Shown here: piece after piece, positions 8,526 through 63,070 of the stretch
Layout: the number at the start of each line of letters is the position of its first letter
How positions within the stretch are numbered: the stretch's first letter is position 1
From: Octopus bimaculoides
Taxonomy: Eukaryota
Direction: 5' to 3'
Assembly (NCBI RefSeq): GCF_001194135.2
Contig: NC_068994.1
Location: 55,061,724-55,125,723 of the forward strand
Length of the DNA stretch: 64,000 nt
Made by a program: the position numbers and the translations under genes
Notes under the pieces: generated by a model
Seen by the model: the letters and a program-made list of their open reading frames with translations, nothing else
Database searches by the model: none
Told to the model about the DNA's origin: nothing

Positions 8526-15469
<6,944 letters not shown>

Positions 15470-15515
15470 AAGAGACGACTGTTTTTAAGTACACACTCAC
15501 ATTCACACATGCATG

Positions 15516-15628
<113 letters not shown>

Positions 15629-17642
15629 CAGGATTGGTAGAGTATCAGAAAAAAATACCTTGTGGTACTTCTGGTTATCACTCTTTTACACCTGAGTTTT
15701 CACACACACATACAGAGTAAAGCATTGGACAAAATGATGCCCTTGCATTTCGTCATCATTCTTTTACCATTCTGGGTTCCTAACTTGTGTAGAAAAGAAA
15801 TGGATTTGTAGATATGCACCTATACAAACACACTATTGGTGGAATATCAGAAAAAACCCCTATTTTGGTTTTTTTATTGTGACCTTGTTATAGCGTGTGT
15901 GTGCGTATATGGGTGCCTATATTCAAATCCTTTCTCGGATCAACTTTTCCTTTCTTTCATCGTTCCTTCCATGGGACCAGTATCATTTGTACCTGTATAC
16001 AATTTGCACCTGCGTGAAAATACTGGAGTTGATGTAATCGACTGCACTTTGTTAAGATGTCACCCCCCCAGCATGGCTACAAGACCATCGAGTGAAACCA
16101 GGAAAATAACTTAGGAAATCACATAAGTATACAGAATACCCTCATCACAGAATCAGATAGTAGGGATGTAAAAAAAAACAACAAAAAACAAACAAGTAAA
16201 CAATAGTGCAACAACAATAAAAACCAAGCACAAACACTCACTACTTAAAAGCCATGATTTTTTTTTGTAGTTTTTGCATTTGAAACTGAGCTGTGTGAGA
16301 TTTAGATAATGACAAAACATTTTCTTTTTAAACCCAAACAATTATTCCAGTGTATAGAATTTCCTGATAAATATGAATCTTATAGTTTGTTGGAATGTGA
16401 TTTCTATTTTTATATTTAACTTTCGTTCTTTTTGAACTTGTCCATTTTACTTTTTTTAATAAAAATAAAACTTAAAAAGATATTCAAGATGTTTTCTTTT
16501 TTCTTTTTCTCAATTTCTTTTTCCATTCTCACCCTCACTATCTTCTGTGAGTCTCTTGTACAACAATCAGGTGTCACTAACTGTGGCACATGACATACGC
16601 AGTCTCTCTCCTGTACATGCTTACATCTTCTGTCCACCCGCACTCCCATTTCTTCTTCCCCCATTCACTTCTCACCCAGATGTAACATCACTATTTTTAT
16701 TCCTTCCCAACTCTACCCTGATCACATGCCCCCCACACACACACTCTTCTAAAGTGTAAATTGCCATGTGACCCCTTTATAGCAGGAAGCCTATTCTGAT
16801 CCGGCCCCTTTTCTCTTTCTTTAATCCCTCATCTCCTGTCTCTCTCAAGCCTTGTAAGTGATATGGCAACCCCACTAGTGTTGGTGGCATGCAGAAAGCA
16901 CCTAGTAGACGCTGTAAAGTGTAAAATGGTTAGCATTAGGAAGGGCATTCAGCTGTAGAAACCATGTTGTAGTAGACAGTGGAGCACAATGCAGTCTTTT
17001 GGGTCATTGTGCCGATGCCAGCAGGAAACAAGACTTTTAACCATATGGTTAGAAAGCTAACCTTTAGTCCATACAGTTATGCCTACATCTATCAAATCCA
17101 TACTTTTACTAAGACTGAAGAAGTTTTGAGATTATTTCTAACAGTTCCAGTGTCATTTATTATAAATATATACTTTACCCGATCGTGACAAAAGTAATTT
17201 GAAGGTCAACATTTTCCCGTAGTTAAGCTTAGTCAAGACAATTCAGTCGGCACACATTCTGTATCCTTGTTGATTGCTACAATCTCAGATAACTTCTGCA
17301 CAGTAATTACCACAAAACATTTTTTCAGCTCAATTTACTTTATTGGCTGTATGACAAAGTTTCCAGAGTAAAGAGCCAGCTTCCATAGTAAGGTTCTCAC
17401 AAGCCAATCAAATATCTCCAACAAAATATCTGTTCTTGTATCTTAACATCAACCATTTCACACAGAACCTTCACAACATTCATCCTGCTAGTCTGTTGAT
17501 TCCTAGCATTTTCCCCACAAGAATCTCACCTGCTTTCGAAAACACCAACTCTGATTTATGTTCTACTAGAAATGCAAAGTTAATACAAAACCAATCGGTT
17601 CATTTACTTTATTGATATCTCACTTGAAACAAGTCTCCACAA

Positions 17643-18369
17643 TTAAAGTGTTGCAATTTTGGGGGTTATGATAAGATTTTTACGGGAAGCTGAACCAGCA
17701 TAGCTGGGCAATCCCATTTTTTTCAGTTCTTCAGTTGCCAAAAAGCAAGGCTGCAAAATAAGCTCATTTTTGGAATTAGCTTCATCTAAAGTATAAGCAT
17801 ATTCATGTCCCTTAGGAATTCTACCAGGGGCTGGTATCTTGGGGATATGACAGGCTCTAGTCTCTATGATTTCTACTAACTCATCATGTTTCAATACTTT
17901 GGATGGTTTTTCAGTAGTCTTCTTGGGGCTAGATTTCGCTTCGAATTTTGAAGCAAGTCTTTTCTTTTGTGCCTCATCTTGTTCTTCAAAGCGTATAAAT
18001 TTTTTTGGCGGAATCACTTCTTTTTCAAATTCTTCTGGGAAATTTCTGCTTTTTACCTTTTCTGTACTTACTATTACTGCATCAGGCGCATAATTGAAGA
18101 GGTTGTTTGCACACTCTGCAGCTTTGCTGTTGTAGCTAAATATGTTGTTGTCCGTTGCACTAAAAGGATCAGGGTAATTATCTGGTTGGATAGGGGCGTA
18201 ATCTTCGTTACCAGGATGCTCCTTCAACCAGTCTCTTAGACAGGCTGCTTCATGTCCACGTGAACCAATGAGAGAGCAGTTACAGCCACAGATATAACAT
18301 ATTATATTGTTTCTTTTGTATTCCTCACTGAACTCCGTAGAAGTTCTTTCATCTCCATTTGAATTATCC
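17643..18369 (-). CDS. ZNF474-like single C2HC zinc-finger protein, paralog A (coding exon; start not identified)
   Basis: Acceptor tttctttgtag at 18370-18371. The frame is open for 241 aa from DNSNGD to TAA. It contains CYICGCNCSLIGSRGHEAACLRDW (C-x2-C-x11-H-x3-C-x3-W) followed by PDPF..YN..AA. AATAAA lies at 17608-17613 on the minus strand. Clear similarity to the exon at 24668-25383. The ORF track starts it too late, at 18227. Confidence 0.8.
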
Positions 18370-19047
18370 CTACAAAGAAACAGAAATTAACACACATTAA
18401 ACAAAAAAAAAAAAAAAAAGAAAGAATTCATCTTTACCAATAAAGCAAACATTGGTGTTTGATGCAGTCCTTGGAATTATCAGATCCTGTCAAACTGTCT
18501 AACCGATGCCAGCAGGGAACAAAGACAGTAAATGACGATGACCAGTGCTAGGTTATGTTATCAATAAACTGACAGTATGATGAATCAACAAGGAATCTAT
18601 GTGGTCAGTTAACTTGCTAGAAAGAACAGCTAAATCTCCTTCATACCAACATTATTGCAATGCTTCTCAAAATTTTTTGGGGCTATTGTGACCCCCACTT
18701 CCTTTCTCTTAAGAACACTTTTTTGATACTTTCTTGCTTTGACCCAGCAAAATTCAAAACCTATGTACATATCTATATAGAAGCTCGCATAAGTGAGGAC
18801 CTTGCCTAATGCTACAGGTGAAGTGGCTGCCTTTATTACATATATGGATATACCATAAATTTTGACAATGTCGTTTAAATTCTACTTTTGTCTCCAGTAC
18901 CCTTATAAAGTTGTCCTCTTTGTAACTAGTATCCAAAAATTTCAGTCCCTCAGGAGGTGGTGGGAGACAGTACCACTCAATTTGAGATGCACTGCTCTAC
19001 TGACTTAAGAAATAAGACATGGATACTACTGTCATATATACACTGTT

Positions 19048-19090
<43 letters not shown>

Positions 19091-22000
19091 AAAGATAGTT
19101 ACATGAGGAACATTTGTAATCTTGGGCTTTACTGGATTTGAACTAAAGAAAAGCAACCAACAGGTATCATCTTCATAGGTTCACCCTAACAAATCCACTC
19201 ACAAGACTTTAGACTTTGTGAGAGGATTAGTTAGACAGAAACTGAGAGAATCCTCTTTGTGTGTGTGTGTGTGTGTGGCCTTGTCCTGATATTATGTGAT
19301 GATTGCAAATGAGCATCACTGTTGTACAAATGGTGTTGATTTCCAGTCCTCTGTGGAAATATCACACAGGTGAGGGTTGGCAACAGAAAGAGTATCCAGC
19401 CATAGAGAAGCTAGCTCAAAAAATTCTGTCTAACCCATGCAAGCATGGAAAAGTGGATGTTAATACAATGATGATGATGAGGTTGAAAGCTGAGATAATG
19501 ATGATTATATTCAACAAAATGTTGATGTAATATTTAAAAGAAACCTCAATCTTTGAGGATAACTCTAAAATATAATTGTTGGTGAAGGCAGCAGGCTGGC
19601 AGAATTGTTAGCATGCCAGGCGAAATGCTTAGTGGTATTTTGTCTGCCATTACGTTCTGAGTTCAACATTCTGCCGAGGTCGACTTTGCCTTTCATCCTT
19701 TCAGGGTTGATTAAATAAGTATCAGTTATGCACTGGGTCGATGTAATTGACTTAATCCCTTTGTCTGTCCTTGTTTGTCCCCTCTATGTTTAGCCCCCTG
19801 TGGGCAATAAAGAAATAAATAGAATTATTGGTGAAGACCAAAAAAATCGAAATTCATGATTAGCCTACAGAAATACAAACTGAAAATATTCTTTTCTACT
19901 CTAGGCACAAGGCCTGAAATTTTTTTTTTTGGGGGGGGGNNNNNNNNNNNNNNNNNNNNNNNNNNNNNNNNNNNNNNNNNNNNNNNNNNNNNNNNNNNNN
20001 NNNNNNNNNNNNNNNNNNNNNNNNNNNNNNNNNNNNNNNNNNNNNNNNNNNNNNNNNNNNNNNNNNNNNNNNNNNNNNNNNNNNNNNNNNNNNNNNNNNN
20101 NNNNNNNNNNNNNNNNNNNNNNNNNNNNNNNNNNNNNNNNNNNNNNNNNNNNNNNNNNNNNNNNNNNNNNNNNNNNNNNNNNNNNNNNNNNNNNNNNNNN
20201 NNNNNNNNNNNNNNNNNNNNNNNNNNNNNNNNNNNNNNNNNNNNNNNNNNNNNNNNNNNNNNNNNNNNNNNNNNNNNNTTTTTTTTTTTTTTTTTTTTTT
20301 TTGTCGTTGTGTGCTTGTGAGTAAATTAAATTGACGAAAGTATAAATTTATACTCGAAAATAAGGACTGTTAAAATGGCCTTGCAAAGGCAACCATTGGG
20401 GGAATTTCCCCACTTATACTTTCGTCCTAACTTTGAAAAGAATGAGTTGAGCGTTAACGACTCACATCGCACGTGAGATAGGTAAACGGAAGAAAGAACA
20501 GAGATATCATCAAACGATGTTTTTTGATTTGCGAACGGCAATCTTGGATAATAACGTATAAGCATACTTGAAGCTTCGGAAATCAGTTCTGTGACATGCG
20601 ACGACTTAACTCGAGAAACACGTAGCACCAAAACACAAATCAGCAACAACAATAATTAGCTCACTGCTCACATCTGTTTTGATAAAGGGATTGTACATAT
20701 TTTCACAAGTATTTTATTTGATTTTAGGTGGGTTTTTAAACAAAGATATTTATGTTTTTTTAGGCATAACTACAAAGTTTTACCCTCCAGACTTTGGGAG
20801 GTCATAACTTTCAGAAAAATGAATATTTTTAAATGAAATTTTCTATGCATATAGTATTTACTATGTAGAATCTGAATATACAAAAATTTCCGAACCCTGT
20901 AGTTATGCCTGTTTTTAAATATATTCGTGGAGACAGACGTAAAAAAAACAGAGTTTATCGACGGAAGTCGAGGTATATTTTCTTACGTTTTAATCGCTTT
21001 AAAAAAAAAAATACGTGAAGTCGAAAAAAGACGTAACTCAAAATGACGTAGGTTCAAGTATGCCTGTCCCACTTTCTTTTTTCTTCACTCCAAGACTTTC
21101 TAGAGGGTTCCCATCTGTAATTTATTAGCTTTCACTTAACACTGACCTTTAGCTTGCACCCCCCCACCGCCAGTATTAAGGCTCTTCATCCAGCTCCCCT
21201 CTCTCCCTCCATCGCTAACCTTCCCCCACCACTCCCGTTACGGCTAGCCTGCTTGCATCGCATCCTGCACCCCACCCGAATCCCACCACCAGAGTTAATG
21301 TTGTTCACTCAGACCCCCTCACCTTTACTTCCAGCACTATTCTTCCCCTCCCTCCCCATCTGAATTCGAATTCTAATGCTGACCCCACTGATACTGCCAG
21401 TTCACCTCCAAGATCTGTTCTCTGCACCCGTACAAGTCGCTATCTGAAGACCATCAAATGCCACATGTGTAAGTCTAAGTTACCACAGGATCTGCGTCGG
21501 CATTACTGAAGTTCAAGCCGAAAGTTTTTTTTTAACTGGACATGCGACCGATGTCACTTCATCTCTGACACCCTTAGTAGAACAAAACTTTGCTTGATAT
21601 CCAGATCCTTGCTGAAGATTTTTCTGCCGCCCTCCAAGGTTTGTTCAAGCTGAAGCTTGCCAATCGGATCCCTAAGAGCCGGTGGCGGCTCGTATATAGG
21701 CACTGCAGAACTGCAGCACCCCCTATTTCCACTTGATATTATCGATAACATTCCATATAATGAGTCCTTTTTTTCTTTAATTCTTTCTTTATACTTGTAC
21801 ATTATATAATCCTTAAGCTTAATACCAGTAACCATTGTCTAGTTTATGAAAAGAATTTTAAAATCCTTGTATAGAACTGTGCGCTTCACAGTTCCAGCAT
21901 CGTGGTGTTTGGCAGTTGTGCGCATGCTCACATGTCCGAGATAGGAAGCTTCACTTGAAGTAAAGGAGTTTTAATAATAATTTTCTTCATTTTNNNNNNN

Positions 22001-23465
22001 NNNNNNNNNNNNNNNNNNNNNNNNNNNNNNNNNNNNNNNNNNNNNNNNNNNNNNNNNNNNNNNNNNNNNNNNNNNNNNNNNNNNNNNNNNNNNNNNNNNN
22101 NNNNNNNNNNNNNNNNNNNNNNNNNNNNNNNNNNNNNNNNNNNNNNNNNNNNNNNNNNNNNNNNNNNNNNNNNNNNNNNNNNNNNNNNNNNNNNNNNNNN
22201 NNNNNNNNNNNNNNNNNNNNNNNNNNNNNNNNNNNNNNNNNNNNNNNNNNNNNNNNNNNNNNNNNNNNNNNNNNNNNNNNNNNNNNNNNNNNNNNNNNNN
22301 NNNNNNNNNNNNNNNNNNNNNNNNNNNNNNNNNNNNNNNNNNNNNNNNNNNNNNNNNNNNNNNNNNNNNNNNNNNNNNNNNNNNNNNNNNNNNNNNNNNN
22401 NNNNNNNNNNNNNNNNNNNNNNNNNNNNNNNNNNNNNNTTTTAAATCATTGAAATACATGGAGGAAATTTTCCCTTTATTTTCATTTCTCAACTTTGTAT
22501 TTTTTTTTATTTATTTATTTATTTATTATTTTTTTTTGGGGGGGGGGGTTCCAATTACAAAGGTACATAGTTATCAGAACCAAAGAGCCGGATGATGCCA
22601 GCAGAAAATAAAGTCAAAAAGTCAAGAATTATGATATACATATCTTTTACTTGTTTCAGTCACCAGTCTGTGGCCATGCTGGGGCACCACCTTGAAGAAT
22701 TTTAGTCAAATAAATTGACCCCAGTACTGCTTTTTTTTTTTTTTTTCTCTTAAGCCTGATGCTTCTTATTCTATGGGTTCTTTTGCTGAACTGCTAAGTT
22801 ACAGGGACATCAATAAACCAACACCCATTGCCAAGCAGTGGGGGTGGCAAACACAAAAACACATGCACACACACCCACACGCATATGATGGGCTTCTTTC
22901 AGTTTCTATCTACCAAATCCTCTCATAAGGCTTTAGTTGGCCCAAGACTGTTGTTTGGTTGGCCCAAAGTGCCACATAGTGGAACTGAACTTGGAACCGC
23001 CATGTGGTTGGGAAGCAAGCTTCTTACCACACAGTCATGACTGTGCTTGGTTACAAATGTATGCGAACACTAAGGGGGGGGGGGAATTATATTCATAGCC
23101 GCATGCACACAGATTGCAGATGTACATGATACCAAACTGGATTCAAACTAGCAATTTAGTTAAACCCTTTAGCATTTAAACTGGCCATATCTGGCTTCAG
23201 TATTTTCCATTTTATGTTCATACCTGCCAGATCTGGCTTCTCACACCGACTCTACAATGTCATTCAAAAAAATAAACAGGCACAGGTGAGGCTGTGTGGT
23301 AAGAAGCTTCTTTTCCAACCACATGGTTCCGGGTTCAGTCCTACTGCATGGCACCTTGGGCAAATGTCTTCTACTATAGCCTTGGGCCAACCAAAGCCAT
23401 GTGAGTGGATCTGGTAAACAAAAACTGAAAGAAGCCTGTTGTATGTATGTGTGTGTGTGTATATG

Positions 23466-23515
<50 letters not shown>

Positions 23516-24505
23516 GCTTTATTAATAAAACATATTACTCTACCTCTGGTATTCGAGTACTATTTTTTCCACTTTGTTTCACATGTATGTGCTTACTCTG
23601 ATGTGTGTGTGTGTGTGTGTGTGTGTGTTTGTCTCCCAATTATTGCTTAACCCATTAGATATATATTGGGACAATGTACAAATTCAGGGCTTAGAAATCA
23701 AATGACAATCGGAGAGCCAACCAATTGAAACGATGTGTAAAACATAAATATTTACGAGCAGGAAATTTCAGCTTTGACAAAAATGGAAATAATCCTGGAG
23801 TATAGAATCTTAACACCAACACACTTGAGAAATTAAAAACAGCCATTTTGTTTATTCCTGAAAAATATTTTGTTAATTTTATATGGAGTGGATTAAAATA
23901 TACAGCAGCATTTTTTTTATTTTATATGTTTTTTTGAAGTGAAAGCTAGTTTAGAAGTGCAGTTGACAGTTTCACAGTTTCAAGTTACATGTAGCCATTT
24001 ATGCAGAATTGGTTTTACCTACAGAGCCATCATTCATTACAGAATGATAGTTTCACAGCAATCTAATGCATTGTGGGATATGCTGTTAGCTGAATTAAAA
24101 CTACACAGGCTGACGAGTAAATTATTTGTCTTTAATTGCAATGTTTTGTTCTTATGTGCATATCTGTGTGTAGTTCCAATAAGATCACAGCTAATGGAAT
24201 TGGAAATCAAATAAAAGATTACAAAAATATGAGAAAATATGGATACAGTTGTGTATATATGTATACATACATAAACACACACATAAGTGTGTGTATATGT
24301 ATGTATATGAATGTTTGTATGTCTCTATGCATAAATGTAAATGTATATCACACACACATATATGTATGCATGTATATATGTGTGTGCATGTATATATATA
24401 GAGACGGAGAGAGAAACTAACAGATAAATAAATATATATACATGCAAAAACATACATATGCATATATATATTTAAACATACATACATATATATATCTATA
24501 AGTAC

Positions 24506-24556
<51 letters not shown>

Positions 24557-24667
24557 TATATATGTACTATATGGGCTATCATGTGCATGTATTTTTCTTT
24601 CTTCATGCATATTTTATTCTATGCATTTCCAGGTTTGGGGCAGAAATGGCTAAGAATGTTATCCTGA

Positions 24668-25383
24668 TTAAATTGTAGTTATTTTGGATGATATTTGAAC
24701 TGGTCGTCTCGATGCCAGTCCCACATGACTTGGCAATCCACTTTTTATCAACTGTTCAGTTGCAATATAGCATGGCTTTAGAATAAGCTTGTTGGTTGAA
24801 TTCAGCTCATCAACATTGTAACCGTACAGGTGTTCTCTAGGGATTCTGTTTGGAGCACTAGGTTCAGGTAAGAGTGGTGCATATTTCTGCATGGTTTTGA
24901 CTAGCACACTGTGTAGAATAGTCTTTGGGAGCTTTTCATCTGCATTCTTTAAAAAACCAACTTTATCCTGAATTTTTTTTCTTACAACATAGTCCTGTTC
25001 GTCCTGGCGTACAAATCTCTGTGGTTGAATCAGAGTGTTCGGTTGTTTCAAACCTAAAGCTGGAATTTTCTTTAGATCGTGTTTTTTGTTTGCTTTGGGT
25101 GTGATATCAAGGCAATGTACTGCAGTGTCTGCTGCATTTTGATTGTATCTATGTATTTGCTTTGCACTTGAAAGGAAAGGATCTGGGTATGGTTTGGGCT
25201 GTTGGGGTGCAAAATAGTCAAATGTGTGGTTTTCCTTGAGCCAGTCCTTTAGACAAAGTGTTTCATGCTGGCATGAATGTTTTGGAGTACAGTCAATACC
25301 ACAAATATAACAAATAACTCTAGTTGTGTTGTAATCATTACTGAACTTCGTAGATTCATACTTGGAATCTTCTGAAAGCATTC
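24668..25383 (-). CDS. ZNF474-like single C2HC zinc-finger protein, paralog B (237 aa if ATG at 25381 is the start)
   Basis: Acceptor ttgtttatag at 25384-25385, then ATG at 25381. Translates MLSEDSK...CYICGIDCTPKHSCQHETLCLKDW...PDPF...YNQNAA. TAA at 24668 and AATAAA at 24613-24618 (minus). The C-terminal 63 aa are 35/63 identical to paralog A without gaps. Confidence 0.83.
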
Positions 25384-25860: not shown

Positions 25861-28800
25861 TTTCTATATCTGCGTTTTGAGTTCAAATTCTGCTGAGGTT
25901 GACTTTGCCATTCATCCTTTTGGGGTCAATAAAATAGGTATCATTTGAGCACCGGGGCAGGTGGGGGGTGTAATCGACTTAGCACCCCTCCTCCGCACCC
26001 GAAATTGCTAGCCTCGTGTCAAAATTTGAAACCGTTGTTAGAATCAATGTGAAATGACAAACTGGCAGAATGGTTAAGCAAAGCTGGACATTTTGTCCGT
26101 TTTTATGATCAGAGTCCAAATTTCCCCATGGTCGACTTTGTCTTTCATCCTTTTGAGATCGATGAAATAAGTACCAGTCGATCACTGGGAATCGATATAT
26201 CGACCGACCTGTGCTTATAATAGAAAGGATTATTAGAGTTAATGTGGCAAAAAGAAAATAAAACAAAAACTATAAAATCATGTGGAACTCACCGTACAAT
26301 GCTTCATGGCTGCATAGAATCTCCACATGTGGAGAAAACAACACAGAAAAGAAGACATGTTTTTCTCATATTTTTAGAAGATAATTACTTGATTAGATAA
26401 ATTAAATGAAAGAATATTGTTCTAATGATTGAGACCATATAAAACGGCACGAAGCCCGACTCACAGTTGTCCCCCTTTATATCATTTATTTAATCACCTT
26501 GATAGTGATGTCCCATTAGAGTCATTGCTGACCCCTTCTCTTGAAATCAGAGAGGGGGTTAATGTGAATAGCGCAAGGGTAATTTGGAACCAGGAGATAA
26601 GTAGAAATGTGGTGGTGGTGGAGAGTAACTCGAAGTCCTTACGTTGGACAAATGTAAACAAATCAGAAAACGAACCATTACAAGAAGAATTTGTCGATTC
26701 CAGAGCCAAACTAAAGTTTTTTTGGGGTTCCCCCCACAAAACCCAACTGTATCATCCAGCCCAATGTTTCTCAACCATCTTTTTTTTTTTTTACTTATGG
26801 ACCCCTTTGATCCCTATTTTACGTGGACGGATCCCCATAGTCATTCGATGTTTTAAAAAAATCCCATTATATTTTATAATTAAATATAATTCGGAATTGT
26901 ATAAAAATGGTTATTAAATGTTTTGTGTATTGCAAAAGTATAACCAATTTATTGCAGATAAATTTCAGCAACAAAATCTTATATGGGACCCCAAGAGCCA
27001 TATGGACCCTGGACGAAAGCCACTAATCCAACCTTACAGATGCATGCTGAGGATTAAGTCTGTTTATTCTGGAGGCGAGAGTCACACTTGAACGATTTCC
27101 AGCATAGAAAGTTTAGTTGCAAGAATAAGAAGTGGATGGAGAAAGTTCGGAGAACTTTTATCTTTGTTGGTAACAAAAGACCCTTTTATCAGATTGAAAA
27201 GCAGATTGTACAACAGTAATGCTACATGGTTGAGTAACTTTGAATGTGAATACAGAAGATATGCGAAGACTAGAAAGAAATGAAAGTAGCATGCTCCGAT
27301 AGATGTACAATGTCAGTGTGCATGTACAACACAATACAAATGTGCTGAGATAAAAATTGGGCATAAAAAAGCATTAGATGTGGTGTGCAGGAGAGAAGAT
27401 TGTAGATGGATTCGGACAGCTGTATAAAGAAGTTTCTTACTCACACAGTCACGTTTCCGCTTATATATATATATTTTTTTTTTTTCAGAAAGTCATGAGG
27501 AAACAAAGACGGGGTTGGGGGTACTCTTGTGTAAGTATGCTGATCATTTAAAAACGTGGGGTGTAGTTGATTTAATTGATTGCACCTTACTAATACCTAT
27601 TCGTTTTACCTCGCAGGTCGGGACATAAGACAAACTTAGCTCCAGTGGAACTCCGGGAATAAAGGGACATAACTAAATACTGCCTGGCGTTTTTTCCGGC
27701 GTCGATTGGCAATCGGTCATTTTAGATTCTGATTTATCGAAAAATAATCAATATATTTGTTGGACGGAACAAAAAAAAAAAAAAGCAAAAAAACCCCCAA
27801 ATAACTAGATATTAAAAACGATATTTACCAAAGCGATCGAAATCCTCGATGGAGTTCATTTTCTAAAACGTGACTTAAAATTTAAAAGAAAATAAAAATA
27901 GAAAACAGGAAAAACGGCCGAAATCGCCGTCTTTAGGTCGTTTGTTGCAACTGATCTGTGGAACGCAAGAGTGATATATATTGATTCGTACGTACGTACC
28001 TATGTATGTATGTATGTATGTATGTATGTATGTATGTATGTATGTATATATGTATGTATGCATGTATGCATGTATGTATGTATGCATGCATGCACACACA
28101 CACATATACATATACCTAAAAGGAGAGAAATGAGAGATGAAATAAAGTTATAGCCACACACACACACAGAGAAAAAACTTAAGATAAGACTTAACTGCAT
28201 TATTTGTCGATTCTAGGAACTATCATTTGCGCTACAGTTTCAAATGCAGCTGAAGTTGACTATCTTCCATCCTTCTAGAGTGAATAAAATAAAATATCTT
28301 TCAAATACTCAGTTCGCTATCATTGATTCTTACATCACATCCACCAAACTGCCTCCGTTACAAAATAGGTGGATTCGAAAACAGGAAACTGTACTCAATG
28401 ACTTTGAATCTGTCTGTTTGTCTGCCTGTCTTACCTTTATTGCGGAAGCAGTAATCACAGACGCTCTGTAATATAAACGGTAATGCTTTTTAGGCACTTC
28501 TACACAGTATCGTCCTGCACGGGCCTCGATCCCTTTTTGCCAATCCATATAGTTAATAAAGAAATCATTATCATTATTGTTAGACAGGCTTTAGTGTCCG
28601 GTGAAAGATGTTCTGTGATGGACAAGACAGAAAGAACTGAAGACAGACACCTTTCCTCTTTGGTCAAGCCCTCATCAACTTTTTCAAGTTTTTATTTGAA
28701 AAGAAAAGTGAGACTGGAGAAGGATGTGCTGTTACATTCCGTGTCACGCTGAATAGGCGTGTCTGTGGTGTACTCAGCCACTCGCACGTTAATTTCACGA

Positions 28801-29230: not shown

Positions 29231-29830
29231 GTGAATCCAAACGGAATAGTGGAGCGCTTCCATCGACAGTTTAAAGCCGCGTTTCACGCTTATCCTGATA
29301 ATCAATGCTGGATCGAGTACCTCCCAATAGTACTCCTTGGCATTCGAACTTCGTTCAAGGAAGACCTCGGTTTCTCTCCAGCTGAGCTGCTGTATGGTGT
29401 TCCATTGTCTTTACCGGAGCAGATGCTTGTCCCAGTAGATCTGTCGACTCAAGATCCTACTCTTTATGTGAACCACCTTCGTACATACCTTCAAGACCTT
29501 CGGCCGATGAACACTCGGCACCAAACCGTGAAACCTGCAGTCCCGAGGGACATAGCTTCGTGGATCCACGTTTTCGCCAGAGAAGTCCTTTCACTAAACT
29601 TTACTTAGGACCTTATCGTGCTAACAAACATTTCACTATTGACTTGAATGGTTCCAGAGACACTGACTCTGTTGATAGACTTAAAGGGGCCTATACAGAT
29701 GCACATACCTCGGTGTCTCATACACCCCTACACACACGTCTCACCCACCTCCACCAACACACGAAACGACAACCCGTAGTAGTCATCGCGTCCATTGGCC
29801 CAAGAGACTTTACAAGACTATATATATGAA
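29231..29830 (+). mobile_element. Degraded Ty3/Gypsy LTR retrotransposon, integrase C-terminal remnant
   Basis: NGIVERFHRQFKAAF...LPIVLLGIRTSFKEDLGFSPAELLYG is integrase-core-like. After a frameshift comes LYLGPYR..KHFTIDLNG..SVDRLK (GPY/F module), then TTRSSHRVHWPKRL, typical of a Gypsy pol end. A PPT-like gagcggcggg followed by tac-TG at about 29980 may mark the 3' LTR start. Confidence 0.85.
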
Positions 29831-38712: not shown

Positions 38713-62020
<23,308 letters not shown>

Positions 62021-62464: not shown

Positions 62465-63070
62465 GTTTGTGTTTTGTCGACCTACCTACTTATTAGGGCT
62501 TTGGTTTTAGCTAGGTTGACTCTAAGGCCCTTCGATTCTAGTCCTTGCTTCCACACCTAAAACTCCTCTACTTCTGATAGTGACTCAGCAATTAGGGCAA
62601 GGTCATCAGCATAGAGGAGCTCCCAGGGGCATCCCGTCTTGAAATCCTGTGTTATTGCCTGGAGGACTACGATAGATAGGAGGGGGCTGAGGACAGAACC
62701 TTGGTGGACCCTTACCTCTACCCGGAATTCTTCACTGTACTCGTTGCTAACCCTCACCTTACTGACAGAGTCCCTGTACATAGCTTCCACAGCTCTCACT
62801 AACCATTCATCTATCCCTAGTTTCCTCATTGACCACCAGATAAGGGAGCGGGGGACCCTGTCAAAGGCTTTCTCCATGTCAACAAAAGCCAGGTACAGAG
62901 GTTTATCTTTGGCTAGGTATTTCTCCTGAAGCTGTCTTACCAGAAATATAGCATCAGTGGTGTTTTTCCCTGGAACGAACCCAAACTGCATCTCATCTAA
63001 GTTGACTCTCTCCCTAATTAGTTGGGCTATGACCCTCTCAGTGACCTTCATTACCTGGTCCAACAACTTA
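62465..63070 (-). mobile_element. RTE-clade LINE reverse transcriptase fragment
   Basis: ORF 62557-63066 contains QFGFVPGKNTTDAIF, FVDMEKAFDRV, HQGSVLSPLL and LLYADD. After the break it continues WKQGLESKGLRVNLAKTK. Truncated at both ends. Confidence 0.92.

What the first reader, a model, noticed from the sequence alone, without database searches (positions are those of the whole stretch)
17643..25383. Tandem pair of diverged ZNF474-type zinc-finger genes sharing an unrecognised C-terminal domain
Seen in sequence: two same-strand exons about 6.3 kb apart each encode about 240 aa. Each has an N-terminal C-x2-C-x11-H-x3-C-x3-W finger followed by PDPF..YN..AA, then a poorly conserved middle. A gap-free 63-aa C-terminal block is 35/63 identical (AP.RIP..H.Y.Y..DE.NS.N.LIL.PC..ATE.L.K.GLPS..G.ASR). 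Both have AATAAA within about 30-50 nt of the stop. Established knowledge: the finger spacing and following YN-AA helix match the C2HC/C3H repeats of ZNF474, which normally occur in multiple copies with a second finger type. Here there is one finger, and the usual GREF Phe is replaced by an extra Cys in both paralogs. Inference: an old duplication kept under purifying selection, possibly a lineage-specific (cephalopod) family with a new domain. A testis or cilia role is only a guess from ZNF474.
Basis: partly seen in the sequence, partly recalled or inferred. Interest (0 to 1): 0.72.

Follow-up and report, generated by a model that had tools for sequence, protein, structure and literature searches.

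The report
Octopus tandem one-finger zinc-knuckle gene pair
Two neighbouring octopus genes encode small proteins that join one zinc finger of the cilia-linked ZNF474 type to a conserved tail domain with no match in any protein or structure library searched; the genes are real, old and under selection, but what they do is unknown.

Summary
The window is Octopus bimaculoides. On the minus strand, 17646-18369 (gene A, last exon) and 24671-25381 (gene B, whole 237-aa CDS, LOC106872306) encode paralogs that are 40% identical (E 5e-58). Their gap-free C-terminal block is 35/63 identical.

Neither assembly gap touches a reading frame. Gap 19940-20278 lies in gene A's intron, where O. sinensis has a small coding exon, so A's start codon cannot be read here. 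Gap 21994-22438 is intergenic.

The N-terminal ~70 aa are homologous to half of the ZNF474-type repeat unit (hhalign 97.6%; HMMER hits to over 50 PF13913 proteins). They fall below Pfam's own threshold, and the unit's second finger is gone. The GREF aromatic residue is Cys in all 10 family members.

The C-terminal ~85 aa fold confidently (pLDDT 81). They match no Pfam family, PDB sequence or fold, and nothing outside the family among 1.84 billion representative proteins.

Argonauta hians carries both paralogs in the same B-A-cathepsin L order, so the duplication predates the Octopus/Argonauta split. dN/dS is 0.1-0.5 overall and lowest in the C-terminal domain. No expression data could be obtained, so function stays an inference. 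This is a lineage-restricted variant of a known finger family, of moderate interest.

The parts
17646..18369 (-). Gene A, terminal exon coding part (241 codons plus 1 nt of a split codon). It has no ATG before the finger, so the start codon must be in an upstream exon. Stop TAA at 17645-17643.
   Evidence: 85% identical to O. sinensis LOC118766048. The acceptor ttgtag|G is conserved in another octopod contig.
18102..18341 (-). Gene A N-terminal module: STxFSxxY, the C2HC finger (18240-18299), Trp, the PDPF linker and the YN..A helix.
   Evidence: hhalign 97.6% against ZNF474-type repeat units. Coordinates.
17646..17900 (-). Gene A C-terminal domain (85 aa), family-specific.
   Evidence: dN/dS 0.11-0.29.
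17608..17613 (-). Gene A poly(A) signal AATAAA, 30 nt after the stop.
   Evidence: Conserved in contig L001.
20466..20565 (-). Candidate first coding exon of gene A: ATG at 20565, donor GTGAGT at 20465-20460. The donor is conserved with O. sinensis, but a 1-bp indel shifts the frame, so its coding status is uncertain.
19940..20278 (.). Assembly gap inside gene A's intron. It covers the place where the O. sinensis model has its 66-nt second exon.
21994..22438 (.). Assembly gap in the spacer between gene B's 3' end and gene A's 5' exon. It affects no reading frame.
24671..25381 (-). Gene B main CDS (237 aa, P0001 = LOC106872306). The exon starts at 25383 after acceptor AG 25385-25384. Stop at 24670-24668.
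25115..25354 (-). Gene B N-terminal module, with the C2HC finger at 25253-25312.
24671..24925 (-). Gene B C-terminal domain (85 aa).
   Evidence: AF2 domain model with pLDDT 81, pTM 0.67. Coordinates.
24613..24618 (-). Gene B poly(A) signal AATAAA, 50 nt after the stop.
27829..27859 (-). Gene B first coding exon of the annotated isoform X1 model (MNSIEDFDRF plus 1 nt), followed by donor GTAAAT. It lies outside the finding's coordinates.
   Evidence: P0060.

Best explanation
SHOWN. These are two intact tandem paralogous genes of a small family found so far only in Octopus, Argonauta and a few unnamed contigs with the same synteny. Each protein of about 240 aa has three parts.

(i) An N-terminal module of about 70-80 aa descends from the first half of the ZNF474/ZC2HC1-type repeat unit: a C-x2-C-x11-H-x3-C zinc knuckle, a Trp, a Pro-rich linker and a short helix. 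The unit's second finger has been lost. The core aromatic residue is replaced by an invariant Cys.

(ii) A basic, fast-evolving middle of about 60 aa is predicted to be disordered.

(iii) A C-terminal domain of about 85 aa is the most constrained part. It is predicted as beta-alpha, a long Pro-rich loop, a beta-hairpin, a short alpha and a beta strand. It has no detectable relative outside the family.

The A/B duplication predates the Octopus/Argonauta split. The order B, then A, then cathepsin L is conserved.

INFERRED. The protein most likely works as a zinc-dependent two-headed adaptor. The knuckle module would contact the same kind of partner as the ZNF474/ZC2HC1A fingers, proteins that localise to cilia. 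The family-specific C-terminal domain would bring in a second, lineage-specific partner, with the flexible linker between them. A and B would have split this role: they differ in charge (pI 6.1 against 9.2) and in their 5' exon structure. The partners and the tissue are not known.
For: Paralogy and intact frames:
-.

Finger homology:
- HMMER profile hits to over 50 proteins at positions 22-93.
- All 8 hits checked carry PF13913.
- hhalign 97.6%, E 4e-12.

Domain layout:
- AF2 full-length model of B: residues 11-93 have pLDDT 66-81, residues 95-151 are below 50, and the C-terminal part is 62-82.
- The domain-only model has pLDDT 81 and pTM 0.67.

No relatives of the C-terminal domain:
- No Pfam hit for any of 9 members.
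- Nothing significant in PDB sequence searches.
- Nothing in Foldseek against PDB or BFVD.
- Only family members cover the C-terminal part of the profile among 1.84e9 representatives.

Selection:
- Nei-Gojobori dN/dS is 0.32-0.54 for A, 0.39 for B and 0.10-0.14 for group C.
- It is 0.05-0.29 in the C-terminal block and 0.23-0.64 in the middle.
- The excess of synonymous changes is significant (P 0.03 to 2e-17).
- The O. bimaculoides A lineage shows 9 synonymous against 5 nonsynonymous polarised changes.

Age and synteny:
-.

Cilia link of the parent finger family:
- ZNF474 and ZC2HC1A localise to cilia in C. elegans neurons (PMC11317154).

Charge difference between A and B:
-.
Against: - No transcript, tissue or interaction data could be obtained. 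All Logan and ENA contigs carrying family members are genomic.
- Neither paralog reaches Pfam's PF13913 threshold, or even E<=10. The finger may have changed what it binds.
- What the ZNF474-type finger binds is itself unknown, so 'same kind of partner' carries little information.
- Gene A's start codon and first exons cannot be established from this window. The gap hides them, and a 1-bp indel breaks frame conservation in the candidate exon 1.
- The structure models rest on only 9 sequences.
Confidence: 0.55

Rival explanations
1. The C-terminal domain is a very diverged single RyR repeat (Pfam PF02026, the repeat of ryanodine receptors that also occurs alone in bacteria, where it pairs up). 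It would make the proteins dimerise, perhaps A with B.
For: - The C-domain profile hits bacterial and chimeric RyR-repeat chains in PDB: 6uhi E 0.0023 (two copies summed), 6ug5 E 0.4, 6uag E 1.1. The aligned positions include R, G, Y, D, P-C and EL.
- hhalign against 5 RyR repeats gives 59-61% probability and P 9e-5.
- The score of 26 compares with a maximum of 18 in 400 column-shuffled controls.
Against: - The target was picked from a database search. At database level the single-copy E-values are 0.4-1.1, which is not significant.
- No member hits Pfam RyR even at E<=10.
- Foldseek of a confident domain model (pLDDT 81) finds none of the many RyR structures in PDB; the best hit has E 0.49.
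- The RyR signature Trp residues (HExW, GW) are absent.
- Five prolines, two of them invariant, sit where the RyR helix alpha-1 would run.
- The model has a long beta-hairpin there. From memory of published RyR-repeat structures, not checked here, that region is a loop in RyR.
Confidence: 0.08
2. The proteins bind nucleic acid. A single zinc knuckle, a basic disordered linker and a basic beta-sheet domain of PUR/PC4-like shape would together grip single-stranded RNA or DNA.
For: - The top Foldseek hits of both models are PUR-alpha repeats, and a PC4 homolog also appears.
- The linker and the C-terminal domain are basic: pI 9.3 and 8.6 in A, 9.9 and 9.8 in B.
Against: - The Foldseek scores are at noise level: E 0.5-10, probability at most 0.13, TM 0.2-0.3, rmsd 8-10 A.
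- The N-module is acidic in A (pI 4.5).
- No nucleic-acid-binding family is hit by sequence.
- ZNF474-type fingers are not known to bind nucleic acid.
Confidence: 0.12
3. One or both reading frames are non-functional: decaying duplicates, or chance ORFs turned into gene models by annotation pipelines.
For: - Gene A has no start codon in its main exon.
- No O. bimaculoides protein model for gene A is in the collection; the best hit is the O. sinensis ortholog at 85%.
- Its candidate exon 1 is not frame-conserved.
- dN/dS between O. bimaculoides and O. sinensis A is fairly high, 0.54.
Against: - Ten intact ORFs of about 240 codons come from at least six genomes, with no stop or frameshift.
- The excess of synonymous change is significant in every comparison.
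- The O. bimaculoides A branch shows 9 synonymous against 5 nonsynonymous changes.
- The splice acceptor and the poly(A) signal are conserved.
- The missing model for A is explained by the assembly gap over its upstream exon.
Confidence: 0.04

Closest known systems
ZNF474 and ZC2HC1A/B/C proteins (C2HC/C3H-type fingers, Pfam PF13913 zf-C2HC_2)
   Same: - The Cys/His spacing is the same: C-x2-C-x11-H-x3-C.
- The motif ICYICG...HE..CL..W, the following Pro-rich linker and the N-E-A-A helix are shared.
- Profile-profile probability is 97.6% over 70 columns.
   Different: - There is one finger instead of 3-8.
- The second finger of each unit (LVPC..CGRTF...H...C) is lost.
- The aromatic residue of GREF/Y is an invariant Cys.
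- The score is below Pfam's threshold.
- A conserved C-terminal domain of about 85 aa is added, and none of the over 50 finger proteins found has it.
- So far the family is restricted to Octopus, Argonauta and syntenic unnamed contigs.
RyR repeat (Pfam PF02026)
   Same: A weak motif-level resemblance, R..G..Y...D....PC....EL, in the first half of the C-terminal domain.
   Different: - The signature Trp residues are absent.
- The segment is Pro-rich where RyR has a helix.
- The predicted fold differs.
- There is no Pfam or Foldseek support.
PUR-alpha repeats and PC4-like (Whirly-type) beta-sheet domains
   Same: They are the best, though non-significant, Foldseek matches. Both are small beta-rich domains with a short helix.
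   Different: TM 0.2-0.3, rmsd 8-10 A, probability at most 0.13, and no sequence similarity.

Membership tests
Pfam PF13913 zf-C2HC_2 (ZNF474/ZC2HC1-type finger) | C-x2-C-x(11-12)-H-x3-C ligand spacing with the flanking I/V-C-Y-I-C-G and H-E-x-x-C-L-x-x-W residues | tested here: met
   Read directly in A, B and 8 relatives. One relative, the Argonauta B-type copy, has x10.
Pfam PF13913 zf-C2HC_2 (ZNF474/ZC2HC1-type finger) | Score at or above Pfam's gathering cut-off (27 bits) | tested here: not met
   PF13913 is not listed for any of 9 members even at E<=10. The multi-finger hits score 106-229 bits.
Pfam PF13913 zf-C2HC_2 (ZNF474/ZC2HC1-type finger) | Detectable homology to bona fide members by profile methods | tested here: met
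   HMMER family profile: over 50 proteins with E 1e-13 to 1e-4 in 1.84e9. All 8 hits checked carry PF13913. hhalign 97.6%, E 4e-12.
ZNF474 orthologs (multi-finger ciliary or testis protein) | Several tandem units, each with a type-1 and a type-2 finger | tested here: not met
   There is one finger only. The alignment to the unit ends before the second finger, and no Cys pair remains there.
ZNF474 orthologs (multi-finger ciliary or testis protein) | Ciliary or testis expression and localisation | not testable with these tools
   No expression data are reachable. The cilia localisation of ZNF474 and ZC2HC1A comes from PMC11317154.
RyR repeat (PF02026) | Significant sequence match to the family model or its members | tested here: inconclusive
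   PDB single-copy hits have E 0.4-1.1. hhalign gives 59-61%. There is no Pfam hit.
RyR repeat (PF02026) | Two-helix repeat fold | tested here: not met
   The domain model (pLDDT 81) has one 11-residue helix, a Pro-rich loop and a long hairpin. There is no RyR structure among the Foldseek hits.
Any Pfam-A family, for the C-terminal domain | hmmscan hit shared by several members | tested here: not met
   Only scattered single hits with E at or above 0.11.

The most novel reading that the evidence does not exclude
The C-terminal 85-aa domain is a fold with no counterpart in solved structures. It would have arisen, or diverged beyond recognition, in the cephalopod lineage. It was fused to a single knuckle cut out of an ancient cilia-associated multi-finger protein, then duplicated and kept as a pair at one locus since before the incirrate octopods radiated. 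That would make it a lineage-specific two-gene module acting in a cephalopod-specific aspect of ciliated or sperm cells.
Probability: 0.3. Interest if true: 0.55.

Novelty: new variant of a known kind. Interest (0 to 1): 0.35.

Why it matters
This is a well-defined case of how a lineage-restricted gene family can form. One repeat half of an ancient finger protein with a cilia-linked phylogenetic profile is kept, its second finger decays, and a domain with no detectable ancestry is attached. The result then stays as a syntenic tandem pair under selection.

It gives a testable handle on what the poorly understood C2HC/C3H (ZNF474/ZC2HC1) finger binds, because here the finger occurs singly in a small protein. 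It also adds a candidate new domain for Pfam.

It fixes two annotation points. Gene A is missing from the O. bimaculoides protein set, probably because of an assembly gap. An intact A-type gene is unannotated in Argonauta hians.

It does not bear on any long-standing open question.

Tried and rejected
Function and fold leads:
1. Pfam at E<=10 on both proteins and on all 9 members gave nothing recurrent.
2. PDB sequence search with the whole-protein profile gave only noise: an RXLR effector helix at E 0.026 in the disordered middle, and RNF38 RING at E 1.3.
3. Foldseek of the full-length model (pLDDT 63) and the domain model (pLDDT 81) against PDB, and of the domain model against BFVD, gave no hit below E 0.49.
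4. The RyR-repeat lead was followed with hhalign and 400 shuffles. It was left as unproven, for the reasons given under rival explanations.

Naming the species behind group C (P0006, P0061, P0062):
5. A search with the neighbouring retrotransposon Pol returned only unnamed ENA entries.
6. The run and analysis accessions are in no paper of the library.
7. BLASTN showed that contig L005 shares only coding matches with the window, including cathepsin L exons in the same arrangement, and none of its repeats. Argonauta does share repeats. The group C species are therefore more distant than Argonauta but remain unnamed.

Expression evidence:
8. The Logan contigs run through the splice acceptor into intron sequence and end in repeats, so they are genomic.
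9. The spliced isoform X1 is on record only from the genome annotation.
10. The LOC identifiers are in no paper.

Gene A's start codon:
11. O. sinensis exon 1 aligns, and its donor is conserved, but a 1-bp indel shifts the frame. Exon 2 falls in the gap.

Literature:
12. Papers on ZC2HC1A/B/C gave no mechanism for the finger.


Full report
**What is there.**
- The window is Octopus bimaculoides. The 237-aa product of 24671-25381 (minus strand) is the collection's P0001. Its cluster holds XP_014774730.1, 'uncharacterized protein LOC106872306 isoform X1', on a 60.6-Mb chromosome record.
- Both reading frames of the finding are on the minus strand.
- Gene A's frame is open from a splice acceptor (T-rich tract, ttgtag|G; exon start 18369) to TAA at 17645-17643. 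AATAAA follows 30 nt later.
- Gene B's frame starts two bases after its acceptor (tatag|GA ATG; ATG 25381-25379) and ends at 24670-24668. AATAAA follows 50 nt later.
- The two products are 40% identical over 235 residues (E 5e-58).
- No further copy is in the window.

**The gaps.**
- There are 12 runs of N in the window. The two inside the finding do not touch either reading frame.
- Gap 19940-20278 lies in gene A's intron. Aligned to O. sinensis (locus L004), window 20759-20295 matches L004 9828-10259, and window 19811 onward matches L004 13794 onward.
- About 3.5 kb of O. sinensis sequence therefore corresponds to 484 bp of window that is mostly N. That stretch holds the 66-nt second coding exon of the O. 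sinensis model (L004 10438-10503).
- Gap 21994-22438 lies in the spacer between B's 3' end and A's 5' exon.
- The stated 6.3-kb spacing is therefore only an estimate. The same interval is about 14 kb in O. sinensis.

**Gene models.**
- Gene B's whole main CDS lies in its last exon.
- The annotated isoform X1 model (P0060) adds MNSIEDFDRFG from an exon at 27829-27859 that ends in a GTAAAT donor. The phases fit. Gene B thus extends 2.5 kb beyond the finding. No transcript was seen for this exon.
- Gene A has no ATG between its acceptor and the finger, so it needs an upstream coding exon.
- The O. sinensis model (P0002, LOC118766048) starts in an exon whose counterpart is window 20466-20565. The ATG and the GTGAGT donor are conserved, but a 1-bp indel shifts the frame between the species. 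The next exon is under the gap.
- A's N-terminus therefore cannot be read from this window.
- No O. bimaculoides protein for gene A came up in the collection. The best match is the 85%-identical O. sinensis protein. Gene A seems unannotated, most simply because of the gap.

**The N-terminal module.**
- Pfam finds nothing in either protein, even at E<=10, nor in any of 9 family members.
- A family profile searched against 1.84 billion representative proteins found, besides the family itself, over 50 proteins with 2-6 matching stretches each. The best stretch always lay in profile positions about 6-136, mostly 22-93, with E down to 1e-13.
- All eight of those hits that were scanned carry 4-8 copies of PF13913 zf-C2HC_2.
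- Their repeat unit reads ICYICGREFG.KSI.IHEPQCLKKW, then a Pro-rich linker, then NEAA, then LVPC.NCGRTF...H...C.
- hhalign of the family's N-terminus against ten such units gives 97.6% probability, E 4e-12, over 70 columns. The alignment runs from the finger through the Trp and linker to the NEAA helix, and stops where the second finger should begin.
- At that place A has no Cys, while B and group C keep one. This looks like a decayed second finger.
The position is Phe/Tyr in 10/10 units and Cys in 10/10 family members.
- The module is a true derivative of the ZNF474/ZC2HC1 finger, but the proteins are not members by Pfam's own cut-off and are not ZNF474 orthologs.

**The C-terminal domain.**
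- In the 1.84-billion-protein search, only family members match the C-terminal part of the profile.
- AlphaFold2 on the full B protein gives a moderately confident N-module (pLDDT 66-81), a disordered stretch at residues 95-151 and a C-terminal unit.
- The last 89 residues alone, with 9 aligned sequences, give pLDDT 81 and pTM 0.67. The order of elements is beta, alpha (11 residues), a long loop, a 7+10-residue hairpin, a short helix and a beta strand.
- Foldseek finds nothing in PDB (best E 0.49, PUR-alpha, TM 0.28) or in BFVD.
- A PDB sequence search with the domain profile gave one lead, the RyR repeat: E 0.0023 for a two-copy chimera and 0.4-1.1 for single copies.
- hhalign gives 59-61%, with a score above all 400 column-shuffled controls.
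- Several points count against the RyR lead. The target was chosen by the search itself, so the database-level E-values apply. Pfam's RyR model is not hit. The RyR signature tryptophans are missing. Five prolines, two of them invariant, lie where the RyR helix would run. The predicted fold does not retrieve any of the many RyR structures. I leave this lead at under 10%.

**Family, age and selection.**
- Members found: O. sinensis A and B (P0002, P0003); an A-type gene in another octopod's genomic contigs (P0004); and Argonauta hians P0005.
- There is also a third group, 'C' (P0006, P0061, P0062), from one ENA assembly and two sequencing runs of unnamed organisms.
- The Argonauta locus holds both types. 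The annotated P0005 is B-type (L006 10372-11073). An unannotated, intact 238-aa A-type ORF with its own ATG lies at L006 14385-15101. A cathepsin L gene follows on the opposite strand.
- The same order, B then A then cathepsin L, is seen in O. sinensis and in the window.
- A neighbour-joining tree gives clades A (97%), B (98%) and C (100%). The duplication is therefore older than the Octopus/Argonauta split.
- The group C contig has one copy, also followed by cathepsin L exons in the same tail-to-tail arrangement. It shares no octopus repeats with the window. It is the same locus in a more distant, unnamed species.
- All ten ORFs are intact.
- Nei-Gojobori dN/dS is 0.54, 0.32 and 0.41 within A, 0.39 within B and 0.10-0.14 within C. 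By region it is 0.05-0.29 in the C-terminal block, 0.04-0.39 in the finger module and 0.23-0.64 in the middle.
- The synonymous excess is significant in every pair tested (P 0.03 to 2e-17). On the O. bimaculoides A branch, polarised changes are 9 synonymous against 5 nonsynonymous.

**How it probably works.**
- Shown: two folded modules joined by a basic disordered linker. One is a zinc knuckle of a family whose characterised members, ZNF474 and ZC2HC1A, localise to cilia and have a cilia-specific phylogenetic profile (PMC11317154). The other is a family-specific domain under the strongest constraint.
- Inferred: a zinc-dependent adaptor. The knuckle module would bind the ZNF474-type partner, and the C-terminal domain would bind a lineage-specific one. 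A (pI 6.1) and B (pI 9.2) would have diverged in role.
- The ligand of this finger type is not known in any organism, and no expression data could be reached. The functional half of this statement is therefore weak; I put it at roughly 25%.
- Nucleic-acid binding (basic linker and domain, noise-level PUR/PC4 fold hits) and RyR-like dimerisation are the alternatives. Non-functionality is very unlikely.

**Novelty and verdict.**
- The genes are known only as 'uncharacterized protein LOC...' models. Gene A in O. bimaculoides and the A-type gene in Argonauta are not annotated at all.
- The architecture, one ZNF474-type half-unit plus an unmatched conserved domain, is a new variant of a known finger family. 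As far as these databases show, it is restricted to Octopus, Argonauta and the unnamed group C species.
- This is a solid but modest finding. Lineage-restricted families with orphan domains are common in cephalopod genomes, and nothing here points to an unusual mechanism.

Noticed in passing
L006:14385-15101 (+), Argonauta hians BAAFZT010000032.1: An intact 238-aa A-type family gene with its own ATG (MADDDFELESTPTKF...) and an AATAAA about 25 nt after the stop. It lies between the annotated B-type gene and cathepsin L and is not present in the protein collection.
   Followed up: yes
window about 10416-15534 (+): A multi-exon cathepsin-L-like gene (Peptidase_C1; Inhibitor_I29 in the orthologs) lies tail-to-tail with gene A. 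This neighbourhood is conserved in O. sinensis, Argonauta hians and the unnamed group C contig L005.
   Followed up: partly
window 17646-17900 and 24671-24925 (-); alignment A9: Weak, unproven resemblance of the first half of the C-terminal domain to the RyR repeat: PDB E 0.4-1.1, hhalign about 60%, above 400 shuffles. Pfam and fold search do not support it.
   Followed up: yes
window 52078-54672 (-): A long Ser- and His-rich open frame (864 codons as listed) is interrupted by the 890-N gap at 52163-53052. It has no Pfam hit and is probably a large exon of another gene.
   Followed up: partly
window 62557-63066 (-) and 29231-29608 (+): The ORF at 62557-63066 is a reverse transcriptase fragment (RVT_1, E 1e-21). 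The ORF at 29231-29608 gave no Pfam hit, but BLASTN matches it (70% over 160 nt) to the retrotransposon pol ORF of contig L005.
   Followed up: partly
window 24191-24610: A dense TA/CA-type microsatellite block lies directly downstream of gene B's poly(A) signal. It produces spurious ORFs on both strands.
   Followed up: no
L007:385-1110 (P0061) and L001:126-899 (P0004): The N-termini of these database proteins are artefacts of bacterial-code ORF calling on genomic contigs. P0061 starts at a TTG just after the splice acceptor. P0004 reads through the intron's pyrimidine tract.
   Followed up: yes
window 20595-20597 (-): A short upstream ORF (ATG TCA CAG AAC TGA) lies 30 nt before the candidate start codon of gene A's first exon.
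   Followed up: no
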